A program made the translations under genes and the position numbers. From Schmidtea polychroa (taxonomy: Eukaryota), in the NCBI GenBank assembly GCA_044892525.1, contig CM097887.1, positions 50,778,001 through 50,842,000 of the forward strand: a DNA stretch of 64,000 nt, written 5' to 3'. The stretch's first letter is position 1. Each line of letters opens with the position of its first letter. This document shows, piece by piece, positions 9,721 through 28,500 of this stretch. A model generated the notes under the pieces. The model had not been told where the DNA came from, made no database searches, and worked only from the letters and a program-made list of their open reading frames with translations.

Positions 9721-9795
9721 ATATTCCAGTTAAATGAAAATATCGAACAACTAAGAGAAAAGATCGGAGCAGACGAAGATGAGAGTGAAAGCGAC

Positions 9796-11775
9796 GTGAC
9801 AAGTGAAAGTGAAGATGAGAATATCGAGATGAAATGGAGAAAAGAAAGAGAGGAAGCGATAAAACAAGTAAAGGAAATACTTCCAGTGGTAGTAAGAAAC
9901 CAGGAGTTCATCGACCTTATACCATATAAACGCTTCATACAAAAGATAATGAAACTAGAAAGAAACGAAAAAGATTTAATACCAAGCGAGGAGAAAGCGA
10001 TAATAAAGAAGTATATGGAAAAAATGAAACAAGCGGAGACAACACGCTATGTAATAAAAATCGGAACGAGTAAAGGGCTCGAGAGAATATGGATAAAAAA
10101 TACAGTTACGGACGAGCTTTTCGATTGGATAAGAGAACATTTGGGCAGTTCGAGAAAGAAAGAATATCTGTATCAGTATCAAGGAGAACAAATTAAACCA
10201 GATATGCACCTAATAGATGCATTGATCTGGCCAGGAGAAACTCAAATATTGAAGTTGCATAAAGAGAAGCAACCAGCCAATGTTCATGAATGGGCTAAAG
10301 ACGCCAAGGCCGAATACGATTTTAATATCAAGCTAAAATTAGAACAAATAAAACAATGCACTTTGCGACGAAATCTAGATAAATTAATCAAACAAATCCA
10401 GGAACAAGTTGAAGATAACTGGGATCTGCTCATAACAAGACGAACTCCAGCTATGCATGAACTAATGAGTCGACTGCGAGATACAGAATTGCTAAGGATG
10501 AGTGATTGGAGAACCATAAATTTGATCCACAAATATGGGAGGTTAAAAGAAACGGAATCAAAGAAATTAGAAATAACCATATGGTTACCAAACGAGGAGA
10601 AACGACGAATTAAAATGAGCAATCAGAGTACGGTGGATGACTTAGTATCAAAGATAAACCAAGAGATAACGGAAAAAGTACGAAGCGAGAGTAGCGATGG
10701 TATGATAGATGATGTAGTCATGATGTACGATAAAATAATATTACGGGCTGAGGATGACACCCCGTTAAGCGAAATGGGAATGTGGGATAATCACCAAATA
10801 ATTCGAATATTGCCCATGGACGAATTCAGAACCAGAGATGTAACATACCAGAAAGAAATACGAGATAGGATGAAAACGCTATACCAAAAATCAGTAGAGA
10901 TAATTGAAATTCATCAACAGTGGCTAAAAGAGAAGGAGCTACAAGGAAAAATAAAGAAACTGAGTACTAGATCTTGCAGACGAACCCCATGGGAAAGGAT
11001 GTGGAATGCAAAAAACAAAGAATGGGAAATCAGGAAAGGAATTTTCGTAGAAACAGACATTGGCGAGACAGAAAGTGAGCCAGAAGAAGAGGAAGACGAA
11101 CCTCCAAAATACGAAGAGGACGAAATAGAACCGGTATCGGACGATGAAAGCGAAACGGACGTCACGTCCGAAAGCGAAATAGAAACCAGACATATTCATG
11201 CGATGAGAAAGAAGGAACGTGAATATGCTGATATAGACGGGGAAGAGGCGAAAGAAGCGAGAGATCGAGAGGAGAGGGAAAGGTACAAACAACTAAGTGA
11301 CATCTTAGAGACAGGGACAAAGAATCAAAAAAGGCAAACGATAGCACTAGCTAACTTCATTCTAAAAATATCAGACAATATCCACTATCTGAGAGAGATA
11401 GTAAAAGCTATAGAGGAATACCGACAATACAACGAATGGTACCCGGAACAATTGGAGCAAATCATTGGAAAGTGGCGAAACCATGAATGGTCACAAGACA
11501 CCCAAGAAAGGTATCGAATTCGAATTAAATACCCGGATAAAAATGTTGAGGAAGTGGAGGTACATCCAACCACAAAAATTAGAGAATTAAAAAAGAAATT
11601 AGCATACGAAACCCCATTCCATTTACAACTACAAGGAAAATCATTAGATGATAATGCAGATGTCGGAATAACACCCATGAGATTGGGGGAAATCAATGTA
11701 TTGACAATGACAGAAACATTGGGAAAACCAATCAAAAAGAAAACCAAATTCAGTAAATCACGAAAGGTAGTTTAA
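9796..11775 (+). CDS. Gag-frame extension with 2-3 ubiquitin/SUMO-like domains and acidic tracts
   Basis: Same frame as Gag, separated only by TAA 9718-9720. C-terminal RIRIKYPDKNVEEVEVHPTTKIRELKKKL...LQLQGKSLDDNADVG aligns by eye with ubiquitin. LEITIWLPNEEKRRIKMSNQSTVDDLVSKI...YDKIILRAEDDTPLSEMG is Ubl-like. YVIKIG...YQYQGEQIKPDMHLIDALIWPGET is weakly SUMO-like. Confidence 0.6.
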   Translation: MTSESEDENIEMKWRKEREEAIKQVKEILPVVVRNQEFIDLIPYKRFIQKIMKLERNEKDLIPSEEKAIIKKYMEKMKQAETTRYVIKIGTSKGLERIWIKNTVTDELFDWIREHLGSSRKKEYLYQYQGEQIKPDMHLIDALIWPGETQILKLHKEKQPANVHEWAKDAKAEYDFNIKLKLEQIKQCTLRRNLDKLIKQIQEQVEDNWDLLITRRTPAMHELMSRLRDTELLRMSDWRTINLIHKYGRLKETESKKLEITIWLPNEEKRRIKMSNQSTVDDLVSKINQEITEKVRSESSDGMIDDVVMMYDKIILRAEDDTPLSEMGMWDNHQIIRILPMDEFRTRDVTYQKEIRDRMKTLYQKSVEIIEIHQQWLKEKELQGKIKKLSTRSCRRTPWERMWNAKNKEWEIRKGIFVETDIGETESEPEEEEDEPPKYEEDEIEPVSDDESETDVTSESEIETRHIHAMRKKEREYADIDGEEAKEARDREERERYKQLSDILETGTKNQKRQTIALANFILKISDNIHYLREIVKAIEEYRQYNEWYPEQLEQIIGKWRNHEWSQDTQERYRIRIKYPDKNVEEVEVHPTTKIRELKKKLAYETPFHLQLQGKSLDDNADVGITPMRLGEINVLTMTETLGKPIKKKTKFSKSRKVV

Positions 11776-11795
11776 GTACACCAAGTCCGGACAAG

Positions 11796-12851
11796 GTGCC
11801 AAGCAAATCAAATGAAACCGAGGAAATCGAGGAAATCATATTAGAAGATAGTGATGAAGGAGCTGGAGAAAGATCGCCAATTCTGATGAGATGGCCGACA
11901 GGGGCAGAAATCTGGACCACAAGCCAACCGTCAACTAGCTATCAGCAACCAAATAAGCCAAGAATTGAGGAGATCATGGATAATACAACAGAAACCGAAA
12001 CCGACGAACAATTCCAACGACAAACAGGACCAACAAAAGTAACACCGGAAGGTCAAACGGACAAAATAATAGACGAATGGAATGAATGGCTGAGAAACAA
12101 CGACAGCTCATTGCCAAGAACAGATAATGAGAGAAACCCGAATTATGAAATGACAAGAGAAGCTGGAACAATGATGGAGAAACGGGCAAAAGGAAGACCC
12201 AAGAAACAAGGAGAAAAACCCGAATTTAAAACCCGAGAACAAGTAAAACAAGAACAAGGACAAGTCAGACTAGAGAAATTGGACAAAATAGTGTGAGACC
12301 TGAAAGAGGCCCAACCAACAATTGAAAGAGGTGAAAAATGGATACGAGAACTAGTAAAGGATATGTTAATAATAACAAACCCGCAATTGAGACGGTTATG
12401 GCAACGAAAGGTAGCAAACGTGGATGCCAGACAACTATGGAACGCAATATCCGGAATAATTCCGAAATTAATCAAAGAAAAAACGAAAACCACGAAAACA
12501 GATTGGGAAGAGACAAGGAAGGTAATTGAACAATTAACCTTAAACGCAAACGACGACGAACATCATCTAGTGGTATTAACGTTTTTAATGTACAATTTGA
12601 TGGGATTAGCAGCGAGGAAAATACCTAACAAACAATTTGCGAACCACGTTGAAATGACGGTGACAATCATTGAAAATACAATCGAACCACATATTATCCG
12701 CGCCGGCGAGTGGAAAAGGCTTATACAAGCGCCACGAAAAAACGAGCAAGAGAGATCAATGCAAATCAGGTTGAAGAAATTACTAAACGAACTAGAATGG
12801 GAATTGCCAATGAAAGATCCCGCCAGTAGAAAAGCGTCGATTAATTCGCTA
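11796..12851 (+). pseudogene. N-terminal part of the second long reading frame (unknown function), in-frame TGA at 12294
   Basis: ORFs at 11796, 12363, 13083 and 13692 all share one frame and are separated by single stops (12294, 13032, 13662). Confidence 0.6.
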
Positions 12852-14276
12852 ATGATGACCATGATGATATGGATGCTATGTGCAAGCGGAGCATCAGGTT
12901 TTACAATTTACGACTGCGACAATTCGATAATGGGAGATAAATATTCCTTGAGGGATATAGAGGAATGTAGACAAGCATCTCCGAATAAATTGGATGTCGT
13001 GAAAAAGAAGGTCTCCTATCATGTATACCAATAATCAGATTTTATTAGAACACAAGCAAGAGAATGCGTAGTATCAAAGAAGGTGTTGGCATATTACTGT
13101 GGGCAATATTCGTATTCAACTCTCATACTACCCGGATTAGATAAAGAAATAGTACCTATACAACGAGAGGACTGCAAGGAGCTCTTCAGAACCGGATCGA
13201 TGAGAATCAGAGACGGGGTAACAATACACGGACAAAGCGGAATGATCAAGACTGAAAGAATCTACGTAGCCGGACGAGTAAAATCAACTGATGGATCATG
13301 CAACGGAGGCACATACACGATCAGAGGGGAGGTGATATCGGGGGTAGTAGTAATTGAGTCCTACACAGTGGAGTTGAAAGAATACGAAGCACAATTCGAC
13401 GCAAATAATTATCAAATGAAAACCAACCCAGCATGCAGAGCTACGGAAAACGTGTGTAGGACGGGAATTTCGACCATAATATATGAAGCTAACACCCAAA
13501 AATGCCGACTCCAATTGTTAAAAAGTGCTTTGTTCAACGAAGTAAAAGGAGAAATTTACGAAAACGAAGACGATGATGAAGAAAATGAAAACGTAAGGAT
13601 GCGAAATGGAAAACCAGTTCCACCATCCCCCAAAGAAAAAAGACTCACAACACAAAAAACTTAATTAATTACAGATGATCCGGATATCGGTATGAGATTC
13701 ATCAGAGAAAAAGAGACCACCAAATGTGACAGTATAGTATATCGGACGAACTACGCAGGCATTTACATGTCAAGACAAGTAATAGACCGAGTAGTAGGAA
13801 AGGTATCAACGGAGGACGTGAAGTTGTACCTTTATGCCAATAACAAGATGGACTTTTTATTTCATCGTGGACAAACGACAATGCAAAAAGTATATTACGA
13901 TCTTATACAAAATGACTGTTCATTAAATAAAGAGATACTAAAAACAAAATTAGCCATCGCGATAACACACCCAGATAACACGATGCCATCACTCCCATTA
14001 CCGGACGGACATTTTGGTAGAATGGTGGGAGAGGTAATGTATACATACGCATGTACCAAGACGTTCGCGAGAATGCCAAGGAAACCCACAATCCCACCAG
14101 GAAAATGTGCAAACGAATTAGAAATTAGTTACAAAGGGCGGAATAGATTCGTTCAACCCGTCACTAGAATTATGAACCCAATTGGATTTTATCCGAACAC
14201 CTTCAACTGTTCAAATGCATACGGGCCACTATATGAAAAACCCGATGGGAAATGGATAATGTTACTAGTAAAAACT
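12852..14276 (+). pseudogene. env: Env-like glycoprotein of chuvirus (Jingchuvirales)/class III type: signal peptide + ectodomain, C-terminal part deleted, two in-frame stops
   Basis: MMTMMIWMLCASGASG signal-like segment, then FTIYDC...YSLRDIEEC...ECVVSKKVLAYYCG...DC...GSCNGGTY...C....C...KMDFLF...DC...LAIA..P...GEVMYTYAC...CANELEI...RFVQPVTRIM...C...W. This cysteine/motif pattern is the one I recognise from chuvirus glycoproteins. No TM anchor before the junction with RT. Confidence 0.8.
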
Positions 14277-16680
14277 GAGATGTTACTTATGCTACAGGGG
14301 GCCGCATACTTTACGTCTTTAGATCTAAAGAGCGGATATTGGCAGATCAAAGTCAAAGAGGAGGACAAAGAGAAAACAGCATTCACATTGGGTCGAGATC
14401 TATACCAATTCAGGAAAATGCCATTCGGACTGACCAATGCCCCAGCATCATTTCAGAGGTGCATGAACTTTGTCACGCACGGGATCAAGCAGTGTATGGT
14501 ATATATCGATGATTTATTAATATATTCAGCAACATTCGAACAACATTTGGAAGATATCAGAAATGTGTTCATTCGATTACGACAATGGAAGTTGAAACTC
14601 AAACCATCAAAGTGTGATTGGGCAAAAGAGAAAGTTACGTTTTTAGGACACATAGTGTCAGCAAAAGGCAAAGAACCCGATCCAAGAAATATAGAAAAAA
14701 TAAAAACCTGTCCAGCACCGAAAACTGTCACCCAAGTTCAAGAATTCCTCGGATTATGCGGATATTATCGGAAATTCATTAAAAACTACGCAGGTATTGC
14801 GAAACCAATCCAGGAATTAGTGAAAAAAGACATTTCATTTACCTGGGGAGCAGAACAGCAAAAAGCCTTTGAAACATTGCGAGATAAATTAATTGAAGCC
14901 CCAATACTAGTACATCCAGATTTCAAGAAACCGTTCTTATTAGCCACAGATGCAAGTGGATATGCAGCTGGAGCAATATTGGGACAACTCGATGAAGAAG
15001 GAAAAGAAAGAGTAATCGGCTATTACAGTAGAACGTTTAAAAAGCATGAGAAAAACTATTCAGTAACAGAAAGAGAAGCGTTAGCAATAATACAAGCGAT
15101 TAAGCATTTTCGATATTTGTTGTGGGGTCACGAAATATGCATAACGACTGATCATCAACCATTAGTATGGCTCGGACAGCACAAAGAAGCTTCAAGCAGA
15201 TTGATGCGATGGGCAATGCAATTACAAGAATACTCACCGTTCATAAAATTCAAAGCAGGAAGAGCGAATGCCAATGCCGATTGTATGTCAAGATTTATTT
15301 TCCCAGACCTAGTAGATCACGAAATGCAACGAATATGCCTGATTGTAGCAGAAGATTTAGATTTTTGCCAATTACGAAAAGACCAACAAGAGGATGTGGA
15401 GTTGAAGCAAATCATTGAATATGTGAAGACAGGGAAAGCGGAAGTATACGAGAAAGATCAAAAGTTAAAAGAACATATGGATAAACATCGACATCGATAT
15501 GTAATAGAAAAGGAATGGTTATTGATAATGGACGGTGAAAAAAGACTAATGTGTATCCCAGAAAATAGACGTAAAGATTTGCTAACACAGTATCATGACG
15601 GAAGACTCGGAGGACATATGTCATCTAAAAAGACGTTAGCCCGAATGAAGCAAAAGTATTTTTGGCCTACATTGACTGAAGACGTAACGGAATGGGTAAA
15701 AAATTGCATAACTTGCGCAACCAGGAAAAACACGGGAACAAAATGGAAAGCACCATTAAAGCCAATGCCAGTACCAGCAGAACCAATGACAATGATATCA
15801 ATGGACGTAGTCGGTCCACTACCAGAATCAGATAGAGGAAATATATACATATTGGTGATCACGGACTATTTGACTAAATTTCCTGAGGCATTCGCTATGG
15901 CAGACCAGAAAGCGAAAACAATAGCGAAATTATTAGTAGAGGAAATATGTTGTCGATATGGAACACCGAAACAAATACTGACTGACCAAGGAACAAATTT
16001 CATGAGTGAAATAATGAGTGAAGTAACCAATTACTTCAAGATCGCAAAATTAAGAACATCACCATATCATCCACAAACAAATGGTATGACAGAAAGATTC
16101 AATGGAACATTGATTCAAATGTTATCAAATTATGTCGATCGTCATCAACGGGATTGGGATGAGTATATAAAATTATGTTTAATGGCTTACAGAATGTCAA
16201 TTCACGCGTCCACAAAGATGAGTCCGTTCAAGTTGATGTACGGCAGAGAATGTAATATGCCAATGGATTTGGAGTATCAGCCACCGATATCCCAGTATAT
16301 GGAAATAGACGATTATGTGACAAAATTCAAGGAAAGAATGCAGGAAATCTGGGAAACTGCAGGATTGAATATAAAGTTTTATCAGGAAAGTTACAAGGAT
16401 CTGCACGATAGAAAGAAAAACGTTAAACCACATACATTTCAAACCGGTGATTGGGTGATGATTGAAACACCAGAATTGATTCCAGGAACCACCAAAAAAT
16501 TGCAACGAAACGGCAAAGGTCCGTATGAGATCCTATTCGTCGGAGAAACCAATGTAAGAGTACGATTGGTAAACAATCCTTTTACAAGGCCAATATATGT
16601 AAATGTGGCGCGATGTAAGCCAATACCGAAAACAGCCACCAGTCAGCCGGAAGGACGTACATTAACAACAAGATCACACA
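14277..16680 (+). CDS. pol: Pol: RT (N-terminus and protease missing) - RNase H - integrase; part of the 2075-aa ORF 13692-19919
   Basis: YFTSLDLKSGYWQI, MPFGLTNAPASFQ, YIDDLLI; RNase H LATDASG...EREALAI...ITTDHQPL...ANADCMSR; integrase H..GH...CITC, SMDVVGP, TDQGTNF, ERFNGTL, GKGPYEI. Confidence 0.97.
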
Positions 16681-16699
16681 CATATAGAATAAATATGTT

Positions 16700-18660
16700 A
16701 CAACAGATAAACGAACCAACAAGCAATCGATTGGGACTACAACCATCAGAAGCCGAGAAAATCATAAAAGAGGTAAAAGCTAAAATACCCGGATGGGCAA
16801 AAGATAGATTAGATTTTGAGATATTGGGAGGTCTGCTAACAATGATAGAAAACTATGCAAATCGAGAAAGAACACACCCATTACTCAGGGTAGTTAAAAG
16901 TCAATGGCCTATATTATTCACGATCACAGACCACTACGGAGATACACCACTGCACAAGCTTTTAAAGGTGGGTAATAATGAACAAATACTAGAAACAATT
17001 GAAGCATTCCGCGATTGTAACATTTCAACAGATCAAGAAAACAATCAAGGTTACACTCCACTAATGATAGCAGCAAATCGAGATAAAACTAAGGATATCA
17101 TAATAGCGTTGCTGGAAACCGGATCAAAGATAACCACACAAAATCACGATCAGAAAAATGCACTGCATCATGCAATCGAAGGAAAAAGCACCGAAGCATT
17201 CATAATCTTAGTAGACCTATTGTCATATGAGGATAATAGGGAGATAGGAAATATGTATGACGGATTATTGGCAGCAATCAAGGAGAAATTGATAACAATT
17301 ACCGGGATATTAATTTCATGGAGAAACCCGATCAAAAACGATTATATGGTGGATATAAACGAAACATTTACCAAAGGAGAAAACACCTTGATGAAAGAAG
17401 CTATGAGAGGACATCATCTATTCGAAATCCCAAATCAGCTACTACAACGAGGTATAAAGCTCTCAAACCACAAAGACGAACAACTGATCAGAAAGCGAAT
17501 TATCAGCTTTGAAAAATCCATATCTCAATTCACCGATAGAGTGCAAGTAAAATATTGGGAAACCGTGAGTGTTTTATATATGATGGAAAATATGAATAAC
17601 ATTCGAGAAAACTACCTAAGTATTATTCAAGTTCTTACGGCGGAGGAACGCATTACCAGTTCAAACAAGAAAAAGTTAAAAATAAAGAAAGTAAAAACAA
17701 GAGAGTCTGAGGAACAAGTTGATCAAATAATAACTAATATAACAACAACAGGTAAAACCAGGATAATAAACTCAGACCAAGAGATAATAATACGTAAAGC
17801 CAAAGAGGTGTTCTTTGAAGAAATGCGAGATTTATCTGATGAAGCAATACTAACAAAAATAATAAAAACAGTACATACCTACGCAAGAGATCAGACCACC
17901 AATCTAGACATAGGTAAAATAAAAACATTCATACCACTAGCGTTTACCATACCAACAAAAGATTCAAGAACACCATTACAACAAGCAATATTAGCAGCAA
18001 AAGAAAACAGAGCAATAACCATCATAAGAATTCTTAGAGACTTAGGAGAAGGATCTAATGCAAAAAACGAACAAGGAGAAACAGCAATGATGTATGCAGC
18101 AATAACAAATATACACCCGAAAACCCTACATATACTACATCAATCAGGATCAAGACTTGACGAAATATCGAATGAAGGAAACTCCACCATGGATTGGGCA
18201 ACAATACAACCAAACTTGGAAATGATTAGATTCATCTGTAAGAATGCTACAAGAACTGAGGTAGAAAATATCTGTAAAAACATGTCACAGTTCCAATGGA
18301 ATACGATACGGAAAAACTTAGAAGCCATGAAGTTACTGCTAACATGGAGAATACCACAAAGCAATAAATATGCAGTGAATATTAACGAGTTCTACGAAAA
18401 CGGAGAAAATGCTATGGTTAAAAACACACTAACAAAGGGAGGAACTCCAAAAATTACATTAATCGTATTGAACAGGGAAGACCTCAAATTCACGCAAAAT
18501 CAAAACGAGCAAAAGCGAATCGGAAAACATCGGATACAGTTGAGAGAATTGGTAAAAGAATGGAATAGAAAGAGACATGCAGCAACAGGCAGAAAAGAGT
18601 TCGAATTTGAAGCAAAATTAGCAAGAAATAGAGTGCTAACTGCATATCGCAGATTGTTGA
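16700..18660 (+). CDS. Two ankyrin-repeat modules fused in frame downstream of integrase
   Basis: Module 1: YGDTPLHKL / QGYTPLMIAA / DQKNALHHAI / KGENTLMKEA. Module 2: DSRTPLQQAI / QGETAMMYAA / EGNSTMDWAT / NGENAMVKNT. Confidence 0.85.
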
Positions 18661-18905
18661 ATGATATAAATGTCGAGGACGACATTTTAAACGACAGCGG
18701 GGGAGATAAAGACGATAAAGACGACGATAATAATGGAAAAGGTCGAAACGAGAATAAAGAGAACGAGAAATCAGAGGAGAATAATCAAGAAAAGAACAAC
18801 GCAAGTACGAAAAAGGAAGAGGATAACCCGGGAAACCGAATAAAGCAAGAAGAAAAGACGAATAATGGAAAACAGAGGGTATGCCTACTTTTCACCAACA
18901 AAGAA

Positions 18906-19919
18906 ATGGAGACAAATATGATGATAATGATACTTGTATTAACAATGGTGGAAATGATAACAGCCCATGGAGGAATGAGAACGATAAAGGAAGCCAAGGA
19001 AACGGAAAACAAAGATAACAAGGAGGAAGAACTGAAACAAGAAAAGAAAAAGCAAGTACAAGAGCAACAATGGGATCTAAAAGAAGAATGGGATCTAAAA
19101 GAAAGGTGTATATTAGGAAGATGCATGTCTAGAGCTTATCAGAGACTAGTGTTAAAAAATGAAGACGAGGAACCAATAACGGAAGTGGGAATACAAGAAG
19201 CGTACCAACATCGAAACGGGAAGAAAATAACAAAAGTCAAATGGAAAGAGGTACACCTGAATAAAGGAGGTGAGATAGTGATAACACAGCTTCAACCCAG
19301 AAAAGAGCACAAAGTGTGTATTTCAAGGCTAGGACCAGGAGAAAACTGTCTACAATATGTAACGCAACAACAACCACCAAAGGAATATACGGTCTGTATC
19401 CTAAGAAACGGTCCAGAGAGAGAATGTCGACGATACCCTGGGAAAAGAGGGAAGAAAAGGAAAATCAATGATGAAAAAGATGAGGAAAGAAAGCGCAAGA
19501 AAACCAGTGAGAAATATCAGGACAATTATGTATCCGAGGAGGAGATGGAAAAAATACAAAAGATGGCAAAGGAAGGTATGAACGAGGAGGTAGCAAGAAT
19601 ACGAGGAATGATAAAAGGAAATAGCAAAGGCAGTAATCCGAAAAATACAGAGACAACATCAACAATAACGAACAAGGAAAAATTGGAAATTATAAGCGTA
19701 AAACAGATGATGTGGATCAGCGGAATAATAATAACAGGAGCATTTTTAATTATAACGGGGGGAACAATAAAAATAATCAAAGACAGACGGCATCGCGGAG
19801 AACTAGAGATGGCCAGAATGAGAAATTTTCAACATCGTGTAGAACGACCAAGTAATATCAAGCAGGAACAGTGGGTGGAGGCCTGGAATGCTCAGCGCCC
19901 TCCAAACTCACGTATATAG
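18906..19919 (+). CDS. Predicted single-pass membrane protein at the end of the Pol frame
   Basis: Signal-like METNMMIMILVLTMVEMITAHGG at 18906; hydrophobic MMWISGIIITGAFLIITGGTIKII (~19707-19778) followed by a basic KDRRHRG tail. Confidence 0.55.
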   Translation: METNMMIMILVLTMVEMITAHGGMRTIKEAKETENKDNKEEELKQEKKKQVQEQQWDLKEEWDLKERCILGRCMSRAYQRLVLKNEDEEPITEVGIQEAYQHRNGKKITKVKWKEVHLNKGGEIVITQLQPRKEHKVCISRLGPGENCLQYVTQQQPPKEYTVCILRNGPERECRRYPGKRGKKRKINDEKDEERKRKKTSEKYQDNYVSEEEMEKIQKMAKEGMNEEVARIRGMIKGNSKGSNPKNTETTSTITNKEKLEIISVKQMMWISGIIITGAFLIITGGTIKIIKDRRHRGELEMARMRNFQHRVERPSNIKQEQWVEAWNAQRPPNSRI

Positions 19920-20086: not shown

Positions 20087-20446
20087 ATGGAGCGAATAAG
20101 CGATGAAGTAAATCACAGTACGACAACCGAAGAGATGTGGAAACAGCAATGTGCAATGTTAACTCAAGTGATTTCGAATTTACAAGAACAAGGACTCGCT
20201 GTACAAAGAAGCTTAGTCGAAAGTTTAAATAAAGGCTTCAGTTATGTAAGAATAATCGAAGATCAACGAATAAAAATGGAGCAAATGCCGCGAGAAATAG
20301 ACCGAATAACGCGATACAGCCAAGGACAGGAAGAGGAGTTAATGAGAATCGCTGAAGAAATGGAGCAAGAGGAGATAGAAGACTGGTCAGAATGGTTAAC
20401 CAGTAGGGAAGAGGGCGGACAAGAGGCCGACTCTTCCAGCCAATAA
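20087..20446 (+). CDS. Accessory ORF, acidic coiled-coil protein (119 aa)
   Basis: ATG-initiated ORF on the element's coding strand, same codon style, flanked by AT-rich spacers. Confidence 0.6.
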   Translation: MERISDEVNHSTTTEEMWKQQCAMLTQVISNLQEQGLAVQRSLVESLNKGFSYVRIIEDQRIKMEQMPREIDRITRYSQGQEEELMRIAEEMEQEEIEDWSEWLTSREEGGQEADSSSQ

Positions 20447-20526
20447 ATATAACCTAAAACAAAATGTAAATAACTGTAAATAGAAATACGAGATTGTATC
20501 ACTAACGAATATATGTATATATATAT

Positions 20527-21927
20527 ATGATTGTAGAAATGGACAAACGACAACGAGAAGAATTCAAAGAGATTGTCGAACAAGTCAGAAAATCCACCAC
20601 AATTCGAATACATGACCATGTGAAGTGTGGAGTATGCAAGAGCTTATTAAAAGAACCTCACCAAACCAGATGCGGATGTAGAATGTGCAAGGGATGCGTA
20701 GAGGAGATAATAAAGAAGGGACCACAATGGTGCCCAGTATGTAAAGAAACCATGATAACCAGTTTGGGAGATACAAACGAAGATAAAGCAGCGGTGAAAG
20801 ATATGATAAATACAAACTTAGGATGTAAAAACACCCCATGTAATTGGCGAGGAGTGATATGGGAAGTGAGGCGACATATGGAGAAGTGTGAGTATAAAAT
20901 CAGTCAATGCGAACGTTGCCAGGAAGCGATTAAGGCAAATCAAGAGGAAGAGCATCAAAGTCGATGTGTAGAAAGGCTGGAAAAATGTGAATACTGCGGA
21001 GAAACCGATACCCGAAGAAAACTGACTAGTCAACACCATAACGTACAAGAGGAAAAAGTATGCACGGAGTTCAGAGACGAATGTCTTAACAACTGTGATG
21101 AATCCGGAGTAATAAAACTCGCTCAACATCTAAGAGAATGTCGAAAGAAAAAGATAACGTGTGTATTAGGAAAATGGGGATGTCAAAAACAATTACACCG
21201 AGGAGAATTACCCCAACATCTAGCAGGGAACGTATCAACACACGCAGAAATGTGGTCAACGGTATTACAAGAAAACGAAAGGAAAACCGAAAATCTAGAA
21301 AAGGAAATAATCTCGCTAAAAACGTTGATAAAAGAGTTACTACAGGAAAAAGAAGCATTTGAAGAGGCGAGAACAAATACAAAGATACAGATAGATCTAG
21401 TGGAAACTAGCAACATTATGGTGAAAGAACTACATCAAAAAGTAAGCGAAATGAACCTCAACGAATTAATACCAACGGCTCCATACATATGGAAAATAAC
21501 GGGAGTAAAAGAGAAGATGCAGAGAGCGAGAAATGGAAAGGATACAACATTACTAAGTCCAGCATTCTATTCATGGAAAAACGGGTATAAAATGAAAATG
21601 AAAGCATATCCCAACGGGGATGGAAGCGCATACGGAACACATTTCTCGGTATTCTTCTTGATATGCAAAGGGTTGTATGACGAAATAATAGAATGGCCGT
21701 TTAAAGCAAAAATAGACCTCGCAATGATGAACCATCAAAGTACACACGAACAGAGTTTCCATACAGCGGGAAACCTCGTATGTTATCAAAGGCCATTGGA
21801 AGAAGAAGGACCAGCAACCGGAGCACCGAATTTCATCTTACAACGAAAAGTAGAAGATATGACAAGAAACGACACTATATACATAAAAATAGCGGTGAAG
21901 GGAGACGGGAAGAGTAGGACTGAGTAG
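20527..21927 (+). CDS. TRAF: Full-length, intronless TRAF-family protein (RING - TRAF zinc fingers - coiled coil - MATH/TRAF-C)
   Basis: RING CGVCKSLLKEPHQTRCGCRMCKGC...CPVC; five zinc-finger-like repeats; MATH domain YIWKITG...SPAFYSWKNGYKM...YPNGDGSAYGTHFSVFF...GLYDEIIEWPF...NDTIYIKIAV. Confidence 0.95.
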   Translation: MIVEMDKRQREEFKEIVEQVRKSTTIRIHDHVKCGVCKSLLKEPHQTRCGCRMCKGCVEEIIKKGPQWCPVCKETMITSLGDTNEDKAAVKDMINTNLGCKNTPCNWRGVIWEVRRHMEKCEYKISQCERCQEAIKANQEEEHQSRCVERLEKCEYCGETDTRRKLTSQHHNVQEEKVCTEFRDECLNNCDESGVIKLAQHLRECRKKKITCVLGKWGCQKQLHRGELPQHLAGNVSTHAEMWSTVLQENERKTENLEKEIISLKTLIKELLQEKEAFEEARTNTKIQIDLVETSNIMVKELHQKVSEMNLNELIPTAPYIWKITGVKEKMQRARNGKDTTLLSPAFYSWKNGYKMKMKAYPNGDGSAYGTHFSVFFLICKGLYDEIIEWPFKAKIDLAMMNHQSTHEQSFHTAGNLVCYQRPLEEEGPATGAPNFILQRKVEDMTRNDTIYIKIAVKGDGKSRTE

Positions 21928-22148
21928 CGAGACGAATAATTTTGTATATACTAAATTGTAAATATCGGCGTATATATCCAGTAAAATATTATATAATAGT
22001 GTAGAAAAACCCCCAAATCTACTAAAGGTAAACTTAAGCGGAAAATTTCTAAAAATAACCCACCTATATCGAATTGTAACAATAAATAAATAATAGAACA
22101 AATATAAATGTGCGACGTTGAGTTGATAATATCGTTATTCAGACAAAG

Positions 22149-23186
22149 ATGACACAAGAACGAACCGAAGTCCCAAACAACGAAATAAAAATCAGTAGAG
22201 TGCACCGAGAAAGATGGACCAAAGTGATGGCACAGCTAGCAAACCAAACGCGAAATTACCTCGAAGAAGCGAGAGAATGGGAAAACCACCAGTTCCAGTG
22301 GTTAGTACAGAATTTACGAGCGGAGGCCGAGGCCTGCAAAAGAGCCGCCAAATGGTCAGCATTAGAAAGTACCAGGCAAGAGGCACATGGGCATTACCTG
22401 AAGCAATTGGTACAGGAATCGAGAAAAAGACTGACGGACGAGAATAAAAAACGAGAAGTAGAAAAACAAAAAGAGGAGAGAAAAACCCGTCAACTATTAG
22501 TAGAAGCCAGAAAGTGGAAACGGCAACATCAAGAAATCAAAAAGGAACTGAAAGAATTACCTCAGAAATTGGAATACGAAAGTGAACAAGGAAAATGGGA
22601 AGAAAATCTGGATCAGAGAGAAGAGCTAAGAAGGCTCCGAAAAATCGCCGCTAGAAGTCAAACCTGGCAGACCAAGGCCATGGAATTTGAAAGGCATCTG
22701 GCCATGAAACTGTCTATAAAGGAACAGGAGAATACCGCCATGGAAGAGATGATCCTGCAACAGTCAGGTAGAATCGTCGAACTAGTAAATAAGGTGGCAG
22801 ACCTTGAAAGAGACAATAACGGCTATAAGGGGGCACTAGAACAAAGGAATATAGTGCTAGCCGGTAAGAACAAGAAATTGGAAAACGAGAGGAAGATGTA
22901 TGATGAAAATATCAAGAACCTCGAAAAGGAAATCAGGAAATGGGAAAACGGCGAAAAAGCGGAAGAGTTAGAAAAACAGATCGAAGTAAGGGATGACGAA
23001 ACCAGGTATCTAACATACCTGTTGGACGAGGAACTCAACGTGTCAAGAGCGCTAAGAGACGAAGTCCAAGAACTTAGAGCGCAGATTCCCCGGTACTACA
23101 TTCCATTCGATCCCATCGCACTCCAACTACAAACATCAGTAGAAAGCGATGAAGGATACGTAGGCCAGGAAGAAACCTTTGTATAA
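22149..23186 (+). CDS. Accessory ORF, long coiled-coil protein (345 aa)
   Basis: Intact ATG ORF, E/K/R/L-rich heptad pattern; no catalytic motif recognised. Confidence 0.75.
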   Translation: MTQERTEVPNNEIKISRVHRERWTKVMAQLANQTRNYLEEAREWENHQFQWLVQNLRAEAEACKRAAKWSALESTRQEAHGHYLKQLVQESRKRLTDENKKREVEKQKEERKTRQLLVEARKWKRQHQEIKKELKELPQKLEYESEQGKWEENLDQREELRRLRKIAARSQTWQTKAMEFERHLAMKLSIKEQENTAMEEMILQQSGRIVELVNKVADLERDNNGYKGALEQRNIVLAGKNKKLENERKMYDENIKNLEKEIRKWENGEKAEELEKQIEVRDDETRYLTYLLDEELNVSRALRDEVQELRAQIPRYYIPFDPIALQLQTSVESDEGYVGQEETFV

Positions 23187-23361: not shown

Positions 23362-24063
23362 ATGAATATTGGAAACGGACAACCCATCATAACATCTATA
23401 ATCGAGCTAGAAGAGGGAGAAATTGAAGTTGAAGAGGTGGAGCGGAAGAAAACTATCAAGGAAGAATTACAAGAGGAGAGACAAGAAAACGAAAGATTAG
23501 TAGAAAGATGGAGAGACAATCGAAAAATGATTAAAGTATTGAAAAAAGAATATACTTTGTTGGAAGAAGTAAAGAAAGAAGTAGAGGAAGAAAACGAATG
23601 GCTTCACGAGCAGAGAAAACGAGGTAGAAATTGGGAGAAGATTGCGGGAGAATTATGGCAGGAAAGGGCCAGTAGAAAGGCAGACGAAGTGATTAGTGAC
23701 TATTGGAAAACCGAGGCACGGAAACATCAAGAAATTCTGAAAGAGCTACAACTACAACTACAACAAAAACAGAAAGAATGCGAGATAATGAGACGAATGA
23801 ACAACAAATACCAGGAAATAGACGACGGAGGAGACGAGGAAAGAGGAAATGATTTTCTACAAATAATGAACCATAAAAACCTCGAAAGAGCAACGCAAGA
23901 AATAAAAGCACTAAAAGGGAAAATAATAATCCTAAAGCAACAGTTAGACGAAAGAGACAAACAATTAGAAGTACTACCCGAATTGAGAAAACGAGTAATA
24001 AAAGCGGAAACGAAAGTGATGAGAACATCCGAGAAAACCCGTAAAAAGAAAACCCGGCAATAA
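23362..24063 (+). CDS. Accessory ORF, coiled-coil protein (233 aa)
   Basis: Intact ATG ORF, heptad-rich, basic C-terminus KTRKKKTRQ. Confidence 0.7.
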   Translation: MNIGNGQPIITSIIELEEGEIEVEEVERKKTIKEELQEERQENERLVERWRDNRKMIKVLKKEYTLLEEVKKEVEEENEWLHEQRKRGRNWEKIAGELWQERASRKADEVISDYWKTEARKHQEILKELQLQLQQKQKECEIMRRMNNKYQEIDDGGDEERGNDFLQIMNHKNLERATQEIKALKGKIIILKQQLDERDKQLEVLPELRKRVIKAETKVMRTSEKTRKKKTRQ

Positions 24064-24968: not shown

Positions 24969-25001
24969 CGGGGCGCAATTTTAACGGGCCCCGGAGTGAT
25001 T
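24969..25001 (+). promoter_or_regulatory. G-rich segment at the polypurine-tract position (atypical PPT)
   Basis: CGGGGCGCAATTTTAACGGGCCCCGGAGTGATT directly precedes the 3' LTR; not a pure purine run. Confidence 0.35.
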
Positions 25002-25536
25002 TGTTGGGCTAAATTTCAGATTGGAGAAAACTGGAACGAATAGAAAGGTAAACCTCGAAAAATAAATGAAATAAGAAATATATAAATTACCATCATATCT
25101 CACTAGTAAATAGGAAGGAACAATAAAATATCAATAAAAGAATAAGAATAAGTAACCCAACCAAATAAAACCCAATAAACCCCTTAAGATTTAGAAATAA
25201 AACGATTTAAGACACACAGCGGGAAAAATAAAAATAGAATGAACAAAAAAAAGTGAAACAAATAAACGGGAAATTAAAGAAATAAATAAAAAAAAAATAA
25301 AACCATTTCTAAGCCTAATTGAAACAAAAAAAATTATATTACATTAAAATAACAATAAGTCCGCAGAAAAAATAGGAGAAAAATAAGAAAAATAAGAAAA
25401 TAAATAAAATAATAATAAGAAATAAGTTAAGTTATTAAAACCCAATACATTATAATAAAAACATAAAAAATAATAATAAATAGAAAAATTACAAACAAGT
25501 TGCGTCCTGATTGGACGAAAAATACTATATATGTAA
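25002..25536 (+). repeat. 3' LTR, interrupted near its end by hATm; last bases probably at 28708-28717
   Basis: Near-identical to 3173-3709; after the hATm the sequence reads ATATGTAACG, close to an expected ...TGTAACA end. Confidence 0.85.
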
Positions 25537-28500
25537 TAGGGTGGGTCGAATGTTAATAAATTTTGAGTTCAAGAAAGGAAACATGGTTAAAAAGTTGTAT
25601 TTTGGTATAGAAAAATCGAATCAAACCATTTTACTTAGATTTATGGACATTTACTGCTCCCAACTTTTCTCCGAAAATGCAGTTCAACATAAGTGTGAAA
25701 ACAATGTAATTTGGCTAGTGTCGGAATGTGTTTTGCGCCTTTGTCCATATTTAGATGTAGCTTTCTTAAGAGCTTATAAGTATATTATTTACTCTCTTGG
25801 GCTGAGATAGTATATTCTGTGTCCTCATCCCGCATTGAAATATATCCTGACAACGTTAGTGATTAGGAAGGGCCAAATTTGAATTATCCTTTTCAAAGAC
25901 AAAAATCAACTTTCGAAATTATTTTTTATTAAAAACATCCAGCCAAAAGTTTAGAAATGTATTAGCGAGGGCATAAAAGGAAGTCACATGAAATCAGCTT
26001 TGCTTTGCACCTTGGGCAATTCCTTCCTTGATTTTTTACACAGTAGTACCATACCATGTCTGGACTTGTGACCAAACACTTTGCAACTGGCAGAAGAAAC
26101 ATCTTTGATGGCTCTTTCAACGGCTTGAGAATGACAGGGAAATTGTTCTAATGTAATTTTCTTATTCATCTTCAATTCATGATCCAATATATGAGATAAA
26201 AGAGGGGGAGGCGTCAAATTACATTTGTCCAGTCAATCATGTCAACATATGATGTAGCAGACGACTGAAGAAAGACAGTATTCTTGTCCATAGTGCGAAT
26301 CACTTCGGAAGGGAGAAAATTTTGTCTTGCAGTTATGATTTTTCCTGTTGCAAACTTTCTGATTTCTTCATCATCATCACCAACAGCAGCTAGGAGTATA
26401 TTTTCTGGATGTGAGAAGTAATTGTTGTTCTGAATGACAGGAAAGATGATTTCTTGGTCTGATGGATCCAAATCCTGCAGAAGTTGGAGCATATAAAAAA
26501 TATTTCTTGCACCATCTTGGCATGACGAGTGAGTCTTTATATAAAACCATGACGGTCCATAGAAATTGACAATAAATTTCACTATTCGCATGAGAGGTTC
26601 AGATGGAGCAGTTTCGGACATATATAGTCGCAGAATTCTATTAGCTTTCGTTAGCCAGCGACTGTGATTCAAATTTCCTGGTTGTGCCATTTGTAGAAAA
26701 GGGACATCCTTGTTGTTGTGGTACCCTTTATGGACTGCCAAGCATACTCTGAGGAAATACAATTGATCAGTGTTCAATTCTTTCTTCACATTTTCACTAA
26801 TATCTACGACCTTTCCAGGAAGGGACATAAAGGCTACTACGGGCTTGTCTTTTGGATCAAAATCAAGAACGCTTCCTATTTCACCACATGACGTTTTTGG
26901 ACCTTTTGTTTCTCCACCATCGACGACTGAAAAATACTTCCTGAATGGCAATTCATTTGCATGCAACAAGCATATCAGCCATTGTAGAGGTCGCCCTAGG
27001 CTTTTTTCGAGTCTTCTGATTATTCCATTATTTTTTCCGGTGTTTGTATTGGTTCCATCGCACACAATTGCTTGAAGGGTCAGTGAGGACTGCGTGCTAA
27101 CGATGATTGACATGATTTCTTTGCCAATATCCACAGCTTTACTACTTTGAGGTACAACATGATCGATATATGTATCCCCTGGAAAGGCGACAATCACATA
27201 ATGCTCCTCTTTTAGGATCCTTCTATGAAGTAAGGTGGAATCTTGTTTCCCGTCGAAACCGAGGCAAATCAAGTTTTTCGCTTCTGCTGAATGCTGTTCA
27301 ATTTCTCTCTCCCTCCAGTACTTTCTCTGACGCCGTAATTTTGCGGGATCGATGATTGTTTGAGAGGATAACAGTTCCATATCTTTCAGAAAAGCGTTTA
27401 CTAGCAAACACGTGTCTCTGTTGCTCACACCACATCTGTCAACAGCTTTACTTAATTCAGGATAATGTCTTCTATTTTGAAATTCATCACATTCTTCTAC
27501 GCTTGACTCTGAGCTTTCTGTTGAATTGTCTAACTTATCTTTACTTTCATCACTAGCGGCTTCACTCTCCGTGTCACTTCTTGAGGTCGGATGTAGATCG
27601 TTAACTTCAGTGTCCATTATTTCATTTTTCATTTGTTTTCCTTTTCCTGTAGGGCTGCTTTTCGTTTGTTTTCTCTTCAATTTTGAGGTTTCCTGTCTGT
27701 CCGTATTTCCGATTTTCATGTTTCTGGTAGTTTGTTGGTCAATCCAGAACTCCCACTCTAAGGTAGGAATTTTCAAGGCCAATCGGCATGTACACTGACT
27801 TCTTCCACGAGCACCATCATTAAAACATTTGCAGCAACATATGTCAAACAATTTGGAAAACGAGCTTAACTTATCTTGAAATTTGGCAGATGACCTCTTG
27901 CATTCTGGATACTTCTCTAATTCACGCACTTTTGATATTAGTCGCTTGACACGAACCACAATACTGCTGAACTCAACAGTTGGGATACTTGCCTTCATAT
28001 AAATTTCCTTCACCTTATTTGCGAGAAGAGTTGCTTTTTCGTTAAAGCCAGTATGAAATTGCGTACATTTCTCATTGTAACAGTAATCACGAAACACATC
28101 TTCACAAGTAGGTAATTGGTTTCTGGGTAGTTCACAAGTTTGACCAAACAGACAATGACGTGATTTACTTCTTGTTTTGCGAAATTGCTTATTTCTCTGT
28201 CCCTTCATAACTGCTCTTCTGTACTCAGCTCTGGCAAAATAAAAGTGAATCATCAAGTTAACTTTTTTAATTAGGTCCAGCAAACACTTGACATCCAATC
28301 GAAACAAATTAAATTATCTGAGTTTAGACTGACTAGTAGTATCCATGTGGATTATGTGTTGACTGTAGTGTGTGTGTTAGTATTGTTCAGAAGAAATTGC
28401 CTTTGTGAGTGCTTGTGTGAAGGTGCTTCCGTGAATTAACCTCTCTATACATGCACGCGTTAGCTTGGACTTGTGAATAGAGCATGTCAAAAATGGTCTT

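What the first reader, a model, noticed from the sequence alone, without database searches (positions are those of the whole stretch)
20527..21927. Intact, intronless TRAF gene inside the retroelement
Seen: a complete 466-aa RING-ZnF-coiled coil-MATH protein with no stops or introns, although gag/env in the same copy are broken, and with the element's A-rich codon style. The RING has CGCRMC where host TRAFs usually have CGHRFC (His ligand replaced by Cys). Known: TRAFs are adaptor/E3 ligases of TNFR and TLR signalling, and TRAF-family expansion has been reported in planarians. Inference: a retro-captured TRAF spread by a transposon could modulate host signalling and could account for part of such an expansion.
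Basis: partly seen in the sequence, partly recalled or inferred. Interest (0 to 1): 0.88.

Follow-up and report, generated by a model that had tools for sequence, protein, structure and literature searches.

The report
TRAF gene carried by giant retroelement
A complete TRAF signalling-adaptor gene sits as cargo behind the polymerase gene of a 22-kb virus-like retroelement of a flatworm; such elements (planarian "Burro") were already reported to carry TRAF domains, so this is a clear but largely expected example.

Summary
Window 20527-21927 (+) is an uninterrupted 466-aa ORF with RING, five TRAF-type zinc fingers, a coiled coil and a MATH/TRAF-C domain. The AlphaFold2 model has pLDDT 92.6, and the best PDB matches are TRAF1/2/3.

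The ORF lies inside a 22.4-kb LTR element (540-bp LTRs, 99.3% identical). The order is gag, ubiquitin-like, env-like, RT-RNaseH-integrase-ankyrin, then several small ORFs. This matches the published planarian Burro/GYPSM1 giant Gypsy-like elements, which are already reported to carry MATH_TRAF_C, ankyrin and ubiquitin-like modules (PMC6431247).

The TRAF shares the element's A-rich third codon positions (0.76, against 0.53-0.56 in host exons). It nests among planarian TRAFs.

- The RING Cys-for-His is typical of planarian TRAFs, not special to the element.
- Intactness says little. The copy is young, so a neutral ORF would stay open with P about 0.73.

This copy's gag-pol is defective: 4 stops, 1 frameshift and 1 internal deletion.

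The new points are placement and form. The TRAF is stand-alone, full-length and 3' of pol, not 5' as described for Burro1 and Dugesia tigrina. No other copies could be retrieved, so selection and the link to the TRAF expansion remain untested.

The parts
3172..3711 (+). 5' LTR (540 bp, very A-rich; it begins TG at 3174)
   Evidence: Direct repeat with 25001-25538, 99.26% identical over 540 bp. No target-site duplication was recognisable at the outer ends.
5247..6678 (+). Tandem array in the 5' leader: 18 copies of a 79-bp unit
   Evidence: Tandem Repeats Finder gives period 79, 18.1 copies and 97% matches. Tandem repeats are drawn in the Burro elements of PMC6431247 Fig. 2A. Relative L004 has a 79-nt-period array in its leader.
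8275..19919 (+). gag-to-pol coding region of the element (broken). The order is gag (Retrotrans_gag plus CCHC knuckles), ubiquitin/SUMO-like, env-like fusion glycoprotein, RT, RNase H, integrase, two ankyrin-repeat blocks and a long tail.
   Evidence: Pfam hits come (zf-CCHC 1.5e-9, Monjiviricetes_fusion 7e-17 and 1.5e-18, RVT_1 8e-31, RT_RNaseH 3e-39, Integrase_H2C2 7e-21, rve 1e-12, Ank_2 6e-17). The ankyrin blocks also appear. Breaks: 4 in-frame stops and 1 frame change. There is also 1 internal deletion relative to relatives L001/L002, so there is no protease hit and the RT match lacks about the first 58 of 205 profile positions.
20087..20446 (+). Small coiled-coil accessory ORF (119 aa) just upstream of the TRAF
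   Evidence: it has no significant family match.
20527..21927 (+). TRAF gene, 466 aa, intact (the finding)
20626..20742 (+). RING finger (aa 34-72) with eight Cys ligands; the fourth ligand is Cys51 instead of His
   Evidence: Pfam zf-C3HC4. Ligand columns in 95 homologues.
20824..21243 (+). TRAF-type zinc fingers (aa 100-239; five C-C-H-C/H units)
   Evidence: The Cys/His columns are invariant or nearly so in alignments A1 and A3. The region matches the TRAF6/TRAF5 RING-zinc-finger structures. The model places a strand-helix module at each.
21232..21459 (+). Coiled coil (TRAF-N), aa 236-311
   Evidence: A single 76-residue helix in the AlphaFold2 model. It aligns to the TRAF3 coiled coil.
21484..21900 (+). 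MATH / TRAF-C domain, aa 320-458
   Evidence: Pfam E 7e-26 and 2e-25. PDB TRAF2/TRAF3 matches. Foldseek TM 0.80-0.85.
22149..23186 (+). Accessory ORF, 345 aa, Glu/Lys-rich and coiled-coil-like by eye, no known family
23362..24063 (+). Accessory ORF, 233 aa, Glu/Lys-rich and coiled-coil-like by eye, no known family
25001..25538 (+). 3' LTR

Best explanation
The ORF is an accessory (cargo) gene of a Burro-type giant Gypsy-like, env-bearing LTR retroelement of a planarian flatworm.

Origin (inferred from phylogeny, shared lineage traits and composition): a full-length TRAF was taken from a flatworm genome long ago. It has since travelled with the element and acquired the element's A-rich composition. 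In this family it sits as a stand-alone cistron in the variable cargo region 3' of pol.

Mechanism (inferred, not shown): the protein trimerises through its coiled coil. It docks through its MATH domain on host receptor or adaptor motifs, or co-assembles with host TRAFs. It then uses its RING and zinc fingers as a ubiquitin-ligase scaffold. Together with the element's ankyrin and ubiquitin-like modules, this would bias TRAF-dependent NF-kB/JNK/apoptosis signalling in cells that express the element, to the element's benefit.

This particular copy is a young insertion with a defective gag-pol. Its open TRAF frame reflects youth rather than demonstrated selection at this locus.
For: Shown here:
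- The ORF is intact and all TRAF modules fold with high confidence.
- All Zn ligands are conserved.
- It lies between 99.3%-identical LTRs on the sense strand.
- Third-position A/(A+T) is 0.76, like gag, pol and the neighbouring ORFs (0.69-0.81) and unlike host exons (0.53-0.56).
- There is no poly(A) tract or compositional step at its borders.
- It pairs with P0003 at 100% bootstrap. In the single NJ tree that pair falls among planarian TRAFs, but bootstrap support for that wider clade is only 0.31-0.39.
- It shares the planarian CGC RING motif and the Cys-Tyr/Phe motif of the MATH groove.
- The element's architecture (gag, Ubl, env-like, RT-RH-IN-Ank, leader tandem repeats, 22 kb) matches the published description of Burro.
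- Distant relatives (pol 46-51% identical, 15-23 kb) carry different ORFs in the post-pol slot, so that slot is a variable cargo region.

From the literature:
- Burro1/GYPSM1 and Burro2-4 carry MATH_TRAF_C, ankyrin, BIR, BCL2-like and Ubi2 motifs. The Dugesia tigrina element has the TRAF as a separate accessory ORF. The authors propose meddling with apoptosis and ubiquitination (PMC6431247).
- Large DNA viruses also encode TRAF homologues (ISKNV ORF111L, PMC3352826).
Against: - No second copy of this family could be retrieved, so the TRAF's constancy, dN/dS and family-level selection are untested.
- Nothing above 40% identity exists in the protein collections searched.
- Five distant relatives lack any TRAF.
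- Neutral decay since insertion would leave the ORF open with P about 0.73.
- Of the TRAF2 peptide-contact set listed in PMC1334386, Tyr and Asp are kept, Arg is Lys and the Ser467 equivalent is Thr. The three serines are Leu, Val and Cys. Canonical PxQE-type binding is therefore doubtful and the ligand is unknown.
- There are no expression data and no recognisable target-site duplication.
- I could not compare the element with the Burro1-4 reference sequences.
Confidence: 0.75

Rival explanations
1. Neutral passenger. The TRAF was captured by an ancestor of this element lineage but does nothing for element or host. It is open here only because the copy is young.
For: P(ORF still open under neutrality since insertion) is about 0.73. 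The serine positions of the TRAF2-type binding groove are replaced. Distant relatives do without a TRAF. UniParc relatives P0016, P0024 and P0100 look like truncated or frame-disrupted paralogues that lack a MATH domain.
Against: The gene fully matches the element's composition yet keeps all 8 RING ligands, all zinc-finger ligands and the MATH core. The model has pLDDT 92.6 at only 36% or lower identity to any known TRAF. That implies long purifying selection before this insertion. TRAF modules recur in several Burro lineages at different positions.
Confidence: 0.15
2. Secondary insertion. A processed retrocopy of a host TRAF mRNA landed by chance inside this one element copy and is not part of the family.
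For: The ORF is intronless, and no other copy of the family was available to show the TRAF at the same place.
Against: There is no poly(A) tract after the ORF and no flanking duplication. Third-position composition is that of the element, not of host exons. Spacers with the same TGTAAATA motif flank the TRAF and the neighbouring accessory ORFs. The closest known TRAF is only 36% identical. Published Burro elements carry TRAF modules.
Confidence: 0.04
3. Domesticated gene. The host now uses this particular TRAF copy as one of its many TRAF paralogues, and the element around it is just decaying.
For: The TRAF is intact while gag-pol is defective. Planarians have an expanded, well-expressed TRAF/MATH repertoire (PMC6109357).
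Against: LTRs 99.3% identical mean a very recent insertion, too young to show locus-specific conservation. Intactness is expected by chance. Composition has not moved toward the host.
Confidence: 0.05

Closest known systems
[quoted passage not shown] 2018; reviewed in PMC6431247)
   Same: A giant LTR element with Gypsy-order RT-RH-IN and an env-like fusion glycoprotein between gag and pol. It has an ubiquitin/SUMO-like module, ankyrin repeats, leader tandem repeats and a TRAF-family module. It is A-rich and has a planarian host.
   Different: In Burro1, only a MATH_TRAF_C motif is described. It lies inside the 4,873-aa ORF1, upstream of the Ubi2 motif (5' of env-pol). Here a full RING-ZnF-CC-MATH protein is a separate ORF 3' of pol, and no MATH is detectable in the gag-Ubl interval. 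No BIR, BCL2-like or dUTPase hits were found in this copy. It is 22.4 kb with 540-bp LTRs, against more than 30 kb. I could not align it to the reference sequences.
Burro-like element of Dugesia (Girardia) tigrina, described in PMC6431247
   Same: The TRAF module is encoded by a separate accessory ORF rather than inside the polyprotein.
   Different: There the accessory ORF lies upstream of ORF1. Here it lies downstream of pol.
Virus-encoded TRAF homologues: megalocytivirus (ISKNV ORF111L, PMC3352826) and TRAF-like proteins of Klosneuvirus-type giant viruses
   Same: A mobile or viral genome carries a host-derived TRAF. Foldseek against BFVD returns these as the best viral matches (E 6e-28 to 1e-14). 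ORF111L is reported to bind TRADD and to induce caspase-8-mediated apoptosis.
   Different: Those are large DNA viruses of fish or protists. Sequence identity is 12-23%, and several lack parts of the architecture. Here the carrier is an LTR retroelement and the TRAF belongs to the flatworm lineage.
Cellular TRAF2/TRAF3 (TRAF1/2/3/5 group) and planarian TRAFs (Dendrocoelum lacteum TRAF-2/-4/-5, Dugesia japonica TRAF-2-like A)
   Same: The same domain order and length, and the best structural and sequence matches. The planarian-type CGC RING is shared.
   Different: Identity to any of them is 36% or lower. The three groove serines are replaced. The gene is intronless, follows the element's codon usage, and lies between LTRs.

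Membership tests
TRAF family (TNF-receptor-associated factors) | N-terminal RING finger with eight zinc ligands | tested here: met
   The ligands are C34, C37, C49, C51, C54, C57, C69 and C72. Pfam zf-C3HC4 scores 21.8 bits against a cut-off of 21. The fourth ligand is Cys, not His, as in 19 of 95 homologues including the planarian TRAFs.
TRAF family (TNF-receptor-associated factors) | Series of TRAF-type zinc fingers after the RING | tested here: met
   The Cys/His columns are invariant or nearly so in A1 and A3. The region matches TRAF6 and TRAF5 RING-ZnF structures over aa 26-159 (E 6e-15, 2e-13). Pfam zf-TRAF itself did not score at E 0.01 or better.
TRAF family (TNF-receptor-associated factors) | Coiled coil (TRAF-N) preceding the C-terminal domain | tested here: met
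   AlphaFold2 predicts one helix over aa 236-311 at pLDDT above 90. It aligns to the TRAF3 coiled coil. Trimer formation itself was not tested.
TRAF family (TNF-receptor-associated factors) | C-terminal MATH / TRAF-C beta-sandwich | tested here: met
   Pfam PF21355 at 7e-26 and PF22486 at 2e-25. Foldseek gives TM 0.80-0.85 to TRAF1/2/3.
TRAF family (TNF-receptor-associated factors) | Peptide-contact residues of the TRAF1/2/3/5 groove (TRAF2 Arg393, Tyr395, Asp399, Ser453-455, Ser467; list from PMC1334386) | tested here: not met
   Columns were matched by motif in A3. Lys stands for Arg; Tyr and Asp are kept; Thr stands for Ser467. The three serines are Leu, Val and Cys, whereas Ser occupies these columns in 75, 52 and 69 of 95 homologues. 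Cys at the third position is shared with 15 homologues, several of them planarian. This lowers the claim of 'TRAF2-type specificity', not the claim that it is a TRAF.
TRAF family (TNF-receptor-associated factors) | E3 ligase or adaptor activity, and receptor binding | not testable with these tools
   No biochemical data are available.
Burro-type giant Gypsy-like LTR retroelements of planarians | Long terminal repeats flanking an internal region of well over 10 kb | tested here: met
   The 540-bp LTRs are 99.26% identical, their starts are 21.8 kb apart, and the element is 22.4 kb.
Burro-type giant Gypsy-like LTR retroelements of planarians | Gypsy-order pol (RT, RNase H, integrase) with an env-like fusion glycoprotein between gag and pol on the same strand | tested here: met
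   (Monjiviricetes_fusion, RVT_1, RT_RNaseH, Integrase_H2C2, rve). The same order occurs in relatives L001-L005. Protease is absent from this copy (internal deletion).
Burro-type giant Gypsy-like LTR retroelements of planarians | Extra host-like modules (TRAF/MATH, ankyrin, ubiquitin/SUMO-like; also BIR, BCL2-like, dUTPase) | tested here: inconclusive
   TRAF, ankyrin and a weak ubiquitin/Rad60-SLD match are present. BIR, BCL2-like and dUTPase were not detected with Pfam in this copy.
Burro-type giant Gypsy-like LTR retroelements of planarians | Sequence identity to the Burro1-4 or GYPSM1 references; planarian host | not testable with these tools
   No reference sequences or planarian genome are in the collections. 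The host is inferred from the nearest TRAF relatives being planarian and from the AT-rich flanks.
Burro-type giant Gypsy-like LTR retroelements of planarians | Target-site duplication at the insertion | tested here: not met
   No matching 4-6 bp lie outside the two LTR ends. This may reflect recombination, a flanking rearrangement or the assembly.
LINE-mediated processed retrocopy of a host gene (rival filing) | Poly(A) tail, flanking duplication and host-like codon composition | tested here: not met
   No A-tract follows the stop and there are no flanking repeats. Third-position A/(A+T) is 0.76, against 0.53-0.56 in host exons.

The most novel reading that the evidence does not exclude
A sizeable share of the planarian 'TRAF expansion' (121 MATH domains; PMC6109357) may consist of accessory cistrons of Burro-like elements such as this one, not conventional host genes. 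The same may hold for the 'multitude of traf mRNAs' and ankyrin-repeat transcripts that SMEDWI-3 piRNAs degrade by ping-pong (PMC6824462). That paper's example, traf-6, has a transposable element drawn next to it. These cistrons would be expressed as separate units from the post-pol cargo region, where each ORF is followed by a TGTAAATA motif. On this reading, piRNA control of whole 'domain families' would be ordinary transposon control seen through mis-annotated cargo genes.
Probability: 0.3. Interest if true: 0.6.

Novelty: new member of a known kind. Interest (0 to 1): 0.33.

Why it matters
Planarians are a leading model for regeneration and stem cells, and their genomes are dominated by these giant elements. 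If TRAF and ankyrin cargo genes are counted as host genes, gene-family expansion claims need re-reading. So do the lists of piRNA targets and the candidate lists for planarian immunity genes.

For mobile-element biology, this is a clean example of an LTR retroelement carrying a complete immune-signalling adaptor. Until now that strategy was known mainly from large DNA viruses. The TRAF module sits at different places in different Burro lineages, which points to repeated capture or to module shuffling.

The basic fact, a TRAF module inside Burro elements, is already published. The increment here is modest.

Tried and rejected
1. Other copies in the window: tblastn of all element proteins against the window found only self-hits.
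2. Close relatives of the TRAF:
- The word-indexed search gave one 25%-identity hit.
- The exhaustive HMMER search gave 5,889 TRAF-like proteins, but none above 40% identity.
- A profile of the five closest found only four proteins.
- The look-up of encoding contigs has no record for P0003 or P0016.
3. Relatives of the element through pol: the best are 46-51% identical, on ENA metagenome contigs. Five loci were fetched and none holds a TRAF.
4. JGI metagenome scans:
- The first alignment found nothing.
- One alignment was too diverse to search with.
- The third gave 80 generic TRAF loci. Only one had an RT nearby, on the opposite strand and not Burro-like.
- IMG/VR gave nothing.
5. A hidden MATH domain in the gag-Ubl interval, where Burro1 has it: hhalign probability 0.1% and no Pfam hit.
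6. The downstream Glu/Lys-rich, coiled-coil-like ORFs: no meaningful PDB or Pfam match.
7. Literature gaps:
- Grohme et al. 2018 is not held.
- The table of MATH transcripts in PMC6109357 is not held.
- The supplements of PMC6824462 are not held.
8. Rejected: reading the RING Cys as a derived or inactivating change of the element copy (it is a flatworm trait), and reading ORF intactness as selection.
Full report
**1. Observation**

The ORF listing returns 20527..21927 (+), 466 aa, starting at ATG. An in-frame stop lies 21 nt upstream and a second Met sits at codon 5. Given the local base composition, a 466-codon open frame has probability about 1e-15.

The domain evidence is consistent across methods:
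- Pfam finds a MATH/TRAF-C domain (aa 320-457, E 7e-26 and 2e-25) and a borderline RING (aa 34-72).
- A sequence search of the PDB matches the C-terminal half to TRAF3 and TRAF2 (E 1e-28 to 1e-26). It matches the RING plus zinc fingers to TRAF6 and TRAF5 (E 6e-15, 2e-13).
- An AlphaFold2 model built on 95 homologues has mean pLDDT 92.6. It shows zinc-finger modules, one 76-residue helix (aa 236-311) and a beta-sandwich (aa 320-458).
- Foldseek puts the TRAF domains of TRAF1/2/3 on top, with TM 0.80-0.85 normalised on the target.

This is a complete TRAF.

**2. Context**

Two 540-bp, very A-rich direct repeats (3172-3711 and 25001-25538) are 99.26% identical. They bound a 22.4-kb element whose coding strand is the + strand throughout. 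The order is:
- a leader with 18 copies of a 79-bp tandem unit;
- gag (Retrotrans_gag plus CCHC knuckles);
- a weak ubiquitin/Rad60-SLD match;
- a fusion-glycoprotein-like env (Pfam Monjiviricetes_fusion);
- RT, RNase H and integrase;
- two ankyrin blocks and a long tail;
- a series of small ORFs: a 119-aa coiled-coil ORF, the TRAF, and two Glu/Lys-rich, coiled-coil-like ORFs of 345 and 233 aa.

The gag-to-pol region of this copy is defective. It has 4 in-frame stops and 1 frame change. It also has one internal deletion relative to relatives. As a result there is no protease hit, and the RT match lacks about the first 58 of 205 profile positions.

I saw no target-site duplication.

The flanks are host-like, at 24-28% G+C. 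They hold a bHLH gene, exons of an MCM gene and a hAT transposon.

**3. What it is**

The architecture matches the planarian Burro/GYPSM1 elements reviewed by Arkhipova and Yushenova (PMC6431247). The shared features are:
- giant size and a Gypsy-like pol;
- env between gag and pol;
- a Ubi2/SUMO-like motif, ankyrin repeats and leader tandem repeats.

The same review reports a MATH_TRAF_C motif in Burro1/GYPSM1 and in Burro2-4. In a Dugesia tigrina element the TRAF module is a separate accessory ORF upstream of ORF1. A TRAF module inside these elements is therefore already published.

What differs here is the form and the place. This is a full-length RING-ZnF-CC-MATH protein, encoded by its own ORF downstream of pol. 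No MATH is detectable in the gag-Ubl interval, where Burro1 has it. I could not obtain the Burro1-4 reference sequences, and Grohme et al. 2018 is not held. I therefore cannot say whether this is one of Burro2-4 or a further family.

**4. Is the TRAF part of the element?**

Several lines say yes.
- Third-position A/(A+T) is 0.76 for the TRAF, 0.69 for gag, 0.71 for pol and 0.81 for the downstream ORFs. Host MCM and bHLH exons give 0.53 and 0.56, and the hAT transposon gives 0.52.
- There is no compositional step at the ORF's borders, no poly(A) tract after the stop and no flanking duplication.
- The short spacers around the TRAF and its neighbours share a motif. TGTAAATA lies 19-30 nt after the stops of the upstream ORF, the TRAF and the last ORF, and it is doubled in two of those cases. 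Five of the window's 16 exact matches fall in these spacers, against 7.5 expected in the whole window.

These points argue against a chance retrocopy landing in one element copy.

**5. Origin**

The exhaustive HMMER search found 5,889 TRAF-like proteins, none more than 40% identical.
- The best full-length hit is P0003 (469 aa, 36% identity, E 3e-82), a UniParc entry with no organism given.
- Next come Dendrocoelum lacteum TRAF-2, TRAF-4 and TRAF-5.
- A Dugesia japonica TRAF-2-like protein is also among the hits.

In a neighbour-joining tree the window TRAF pairs with P0003 in 100% of 300 bootstraps. In that tree the pair sits inside the planarian TRAF radiation, apart from the named fish and mollusc TRAFs, with a coral TRAF used as the outgroup. 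Support for the wider planarian clade is only 0.31-0.39.

The planarian lineage shares two small traits with the window protein:
- The RING reads C-G-C where most animals have C-G-H. Cys occurs in 19 of 95 homologues, including all named planarian ones in that alignment, and His in 59 of 95.
- The MATH groove has Cys-Tyr/Phe where vertebrates have Ser-Phe.

It is not a change made in the element.

The low identity to every known TRAF, together with full compositional assimilation, points to an old capture followed by long residence.

**6. Relatives of the element**

Pol finds its nearest relatives (46-51% identity over RT-RH-IN) on contigs of one ENA metagenome assembly. Five loci were fetched. 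They have env-protease-RT-RH-IN, some with ankyrin, and LTR-like repeat pairs 15-23 kb apart. One has a 79-nt-period leader array.

None carries a TRAF. Their post-pol slots hold other ORFs, either unknown or RNase_T-like. The region 3' of pol therefore behaves as a variable cargo slot in this wider clade, and the TRAF is a cargo of the planarian branch.

Scans of JGI metagenomes and of IMG/VR gave no TRAF next to a Burro-like pol.

**7. Does intactness mean selection?**

Not at this locus.
- LTR divergence of 4 in 540 implies about 0.37% change per copy since insertion.
- That gives about 5 substitutions in the ORF. About 6% of possible substitutions are nonsense, so P(still open) is about 0.73.
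- By the same rates (my arithmetic: 0.0037 changes per site over 11,645 nt, with the 0.062 nonsense fraction measured on the TRAF ORF), about 2.6 nonsense changes are expected in gag-pol. The four stops seen are within Poisson range of that. Some may also have been inherited from a defective template.

Evidence for past selection is indirect. After diverging to 36% or lower identity, the protein still keeps every zinc ligand and the MATH core, and it folds confidently.

**8. How it most likely works (inference)**

A TRAF with an intact RING, zinc fingers, coiled coil and MATH domain should trimerise and dock on short motifs of receptors or adaptors, or co-assemble with host TRAFs. It should also scaffold ubiquitin transfer. 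Carried by a virus-like element together with ankyrin and ubiquitin-like modules, it most plausibly biases TRAF-dependent survival, inflammatory or apoptotic signalling in expressing cells. PMC6431247 proposes the same for Burro in general.

Of the TRAF2 peptide contacts listed in PMC1334386:
- Tyr and Asp are kept;
- Arg is Lys;
- the Ser467 equivalent is Thr;
- the three serines are Leu, Val and Cys.

The ligand class is therefore probably not the canonical PxQE motif. Whether the protein activates signalling or acts as a decoy cannot be decided from sequence.

Known analogues are the TRAF homologues of megalocytiviruses and of Klosneuvirus-type giant viruses. ISKNV ORF111L is reported to bind TRADD and to induce caspase-8-mediated apoptosis (PMC3352826). 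These proteins are also the best viral structural matches.

**9. The expansion hypothesis and a lead**

Swapna et al. report 121 MATH domains in the S. mediterranea transcriptome (PMC6109357). Their table is not held.

Kim et al. report that SMEDWI-3 piRNAs degrade 'a multitude of traf mRNAs' and ankyrin-repeat transcripts. Zinc-finger TRAF-type and ankyrin domains are enriched among the targets, and a transposable element is drawn next to their example, traf-6. The paper never mentions Burro or gypsy (PMC6824462).

TRAF and ankyrin are exactly the cargo modules seen here. It is therefore plausible, but untested, that part of both datasets consists of element cargo genes. I found no paper in the library that makes this link.

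**10. Verdict**

- The kind is already known, and this is a further member with a different placement of the TRAF module.
- Interest is modest.

**Self-check on the operators' rule.** My first notebook checkpoint lists ORF bounds as printed by the ORF listing. In a broken polyprotein, ORF bounds coincide with interruptions.

Noticed in passing
window 20465-20482, 21957-21964, 24082-24099 (+); degenerate versions after the pol stop and after 23186: TGTAAATA lies 19-30 nt after the stop codons of the accessory ORFs. It is doubled (TGTAAATAAyTGTAAATA) just upstream of the TRAF and after the last ORF. TATATA-rich runs then follow before the next ATG. Five of the window's 16 exact matches fall in these short spacers, against 7.5 expected window-wide. 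From my own knowledge, UGUAAAUA resembles a Pumilio/PUF site, or a UGUA plus AAUAA-like 3'-end signal. It may mark separate cistrons.
   Followed up: partly
window 5247-6678; L004 1535-2010: An 18-copy, 97%-identical 79-bp tandem array lies in the element's 5' leader. A distant relative on an ENA contig also has a 79-nt-period array in its leader, so the period may be a conserved feature.
   Followed up: partly
window 16130-19919 (+): The pol ORF runs on for about 1,260 aa beyond the integrase. The extension has two ankyrin-repeat blocks, a Lys/Glu-rich stretch and a hydrophobic, membrane-anchor-like segment near the C-terminus. None of it has a family match apart from the ankyrin repeats.
   Followed up: partly
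window about 24281-24770 (+): A further small ORF lies between the last accessory ORF and the 3' LTR. Its product contains a hydrophobic, transmembrane-like stretch. I read it by eye from the sequence.
   Followed up: no
window 3172-3176 and 25536-25545: No target-site duplication lies outside the LTR pair. The 3' LTR ends inside a 14-bp unit that is repeated 2.2 times at the 5' LTR/leader junction. The right flank (25.5-34 kb) is richer in G+C (0.38) than the left flank (0.28) and looks like another repeat.
   Followed up: partly
window 26214-28307 (-) and 31020-31781 (+): ORFs of 697 aa and 253 aa with no Pfam match lie in the G+C-richer block next to the element. They may belong to an uncharacterised repeat.
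   Followed up: no
window 262-1041 (-); 40345-43631 (-); 36033-39465 (+): Host and other content: a bHLH gene interrupted by an N run, exons of an MCM (MCM4-like) gene with introns, and a hAT-type transposon with BED fingers. The transposon carries a 442-bp internal duplication (36033-36332 and 36475-36774, 100% identical).
   Followed up: partly
L003 2334-5753, L004 17034-24564 (ENA ERZ25039515 contigs); protein P0203: Burro-like env-pol elements sit on the same metagenome contigs as bacterial-type genes (MacB/ABC transporter, TetR, luciferase-like oxidoreductase, Mnh antiporter). One relative is annotated as a protein of a Flavobacteriaceae MAG. This is most likely chimeric assembly or binning contamination, but I did not check.
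   Followed up: no
proteins P0016, P0024, P0100, P0273 (UniParc entries, organism not given): This is a small group of mutually similar RING-ZnF TRAF fragments, 37-51% identical to the N-terminal half of the window TRAF. They lack a MATH domain, and one has a C-terminus that reads like a shifted frame. That pattern would be expected of decayed multi-copy cargo genes.
   Followed up: partly
literature: PMC6824462 against window 13692-21927: The domains enriched among piRNA-degraded planarian mRNAs (TRAF-type zinc finger, ankyrin) are the cargo modules of this element. The paper does not mention Burro.
   Followed up: partly
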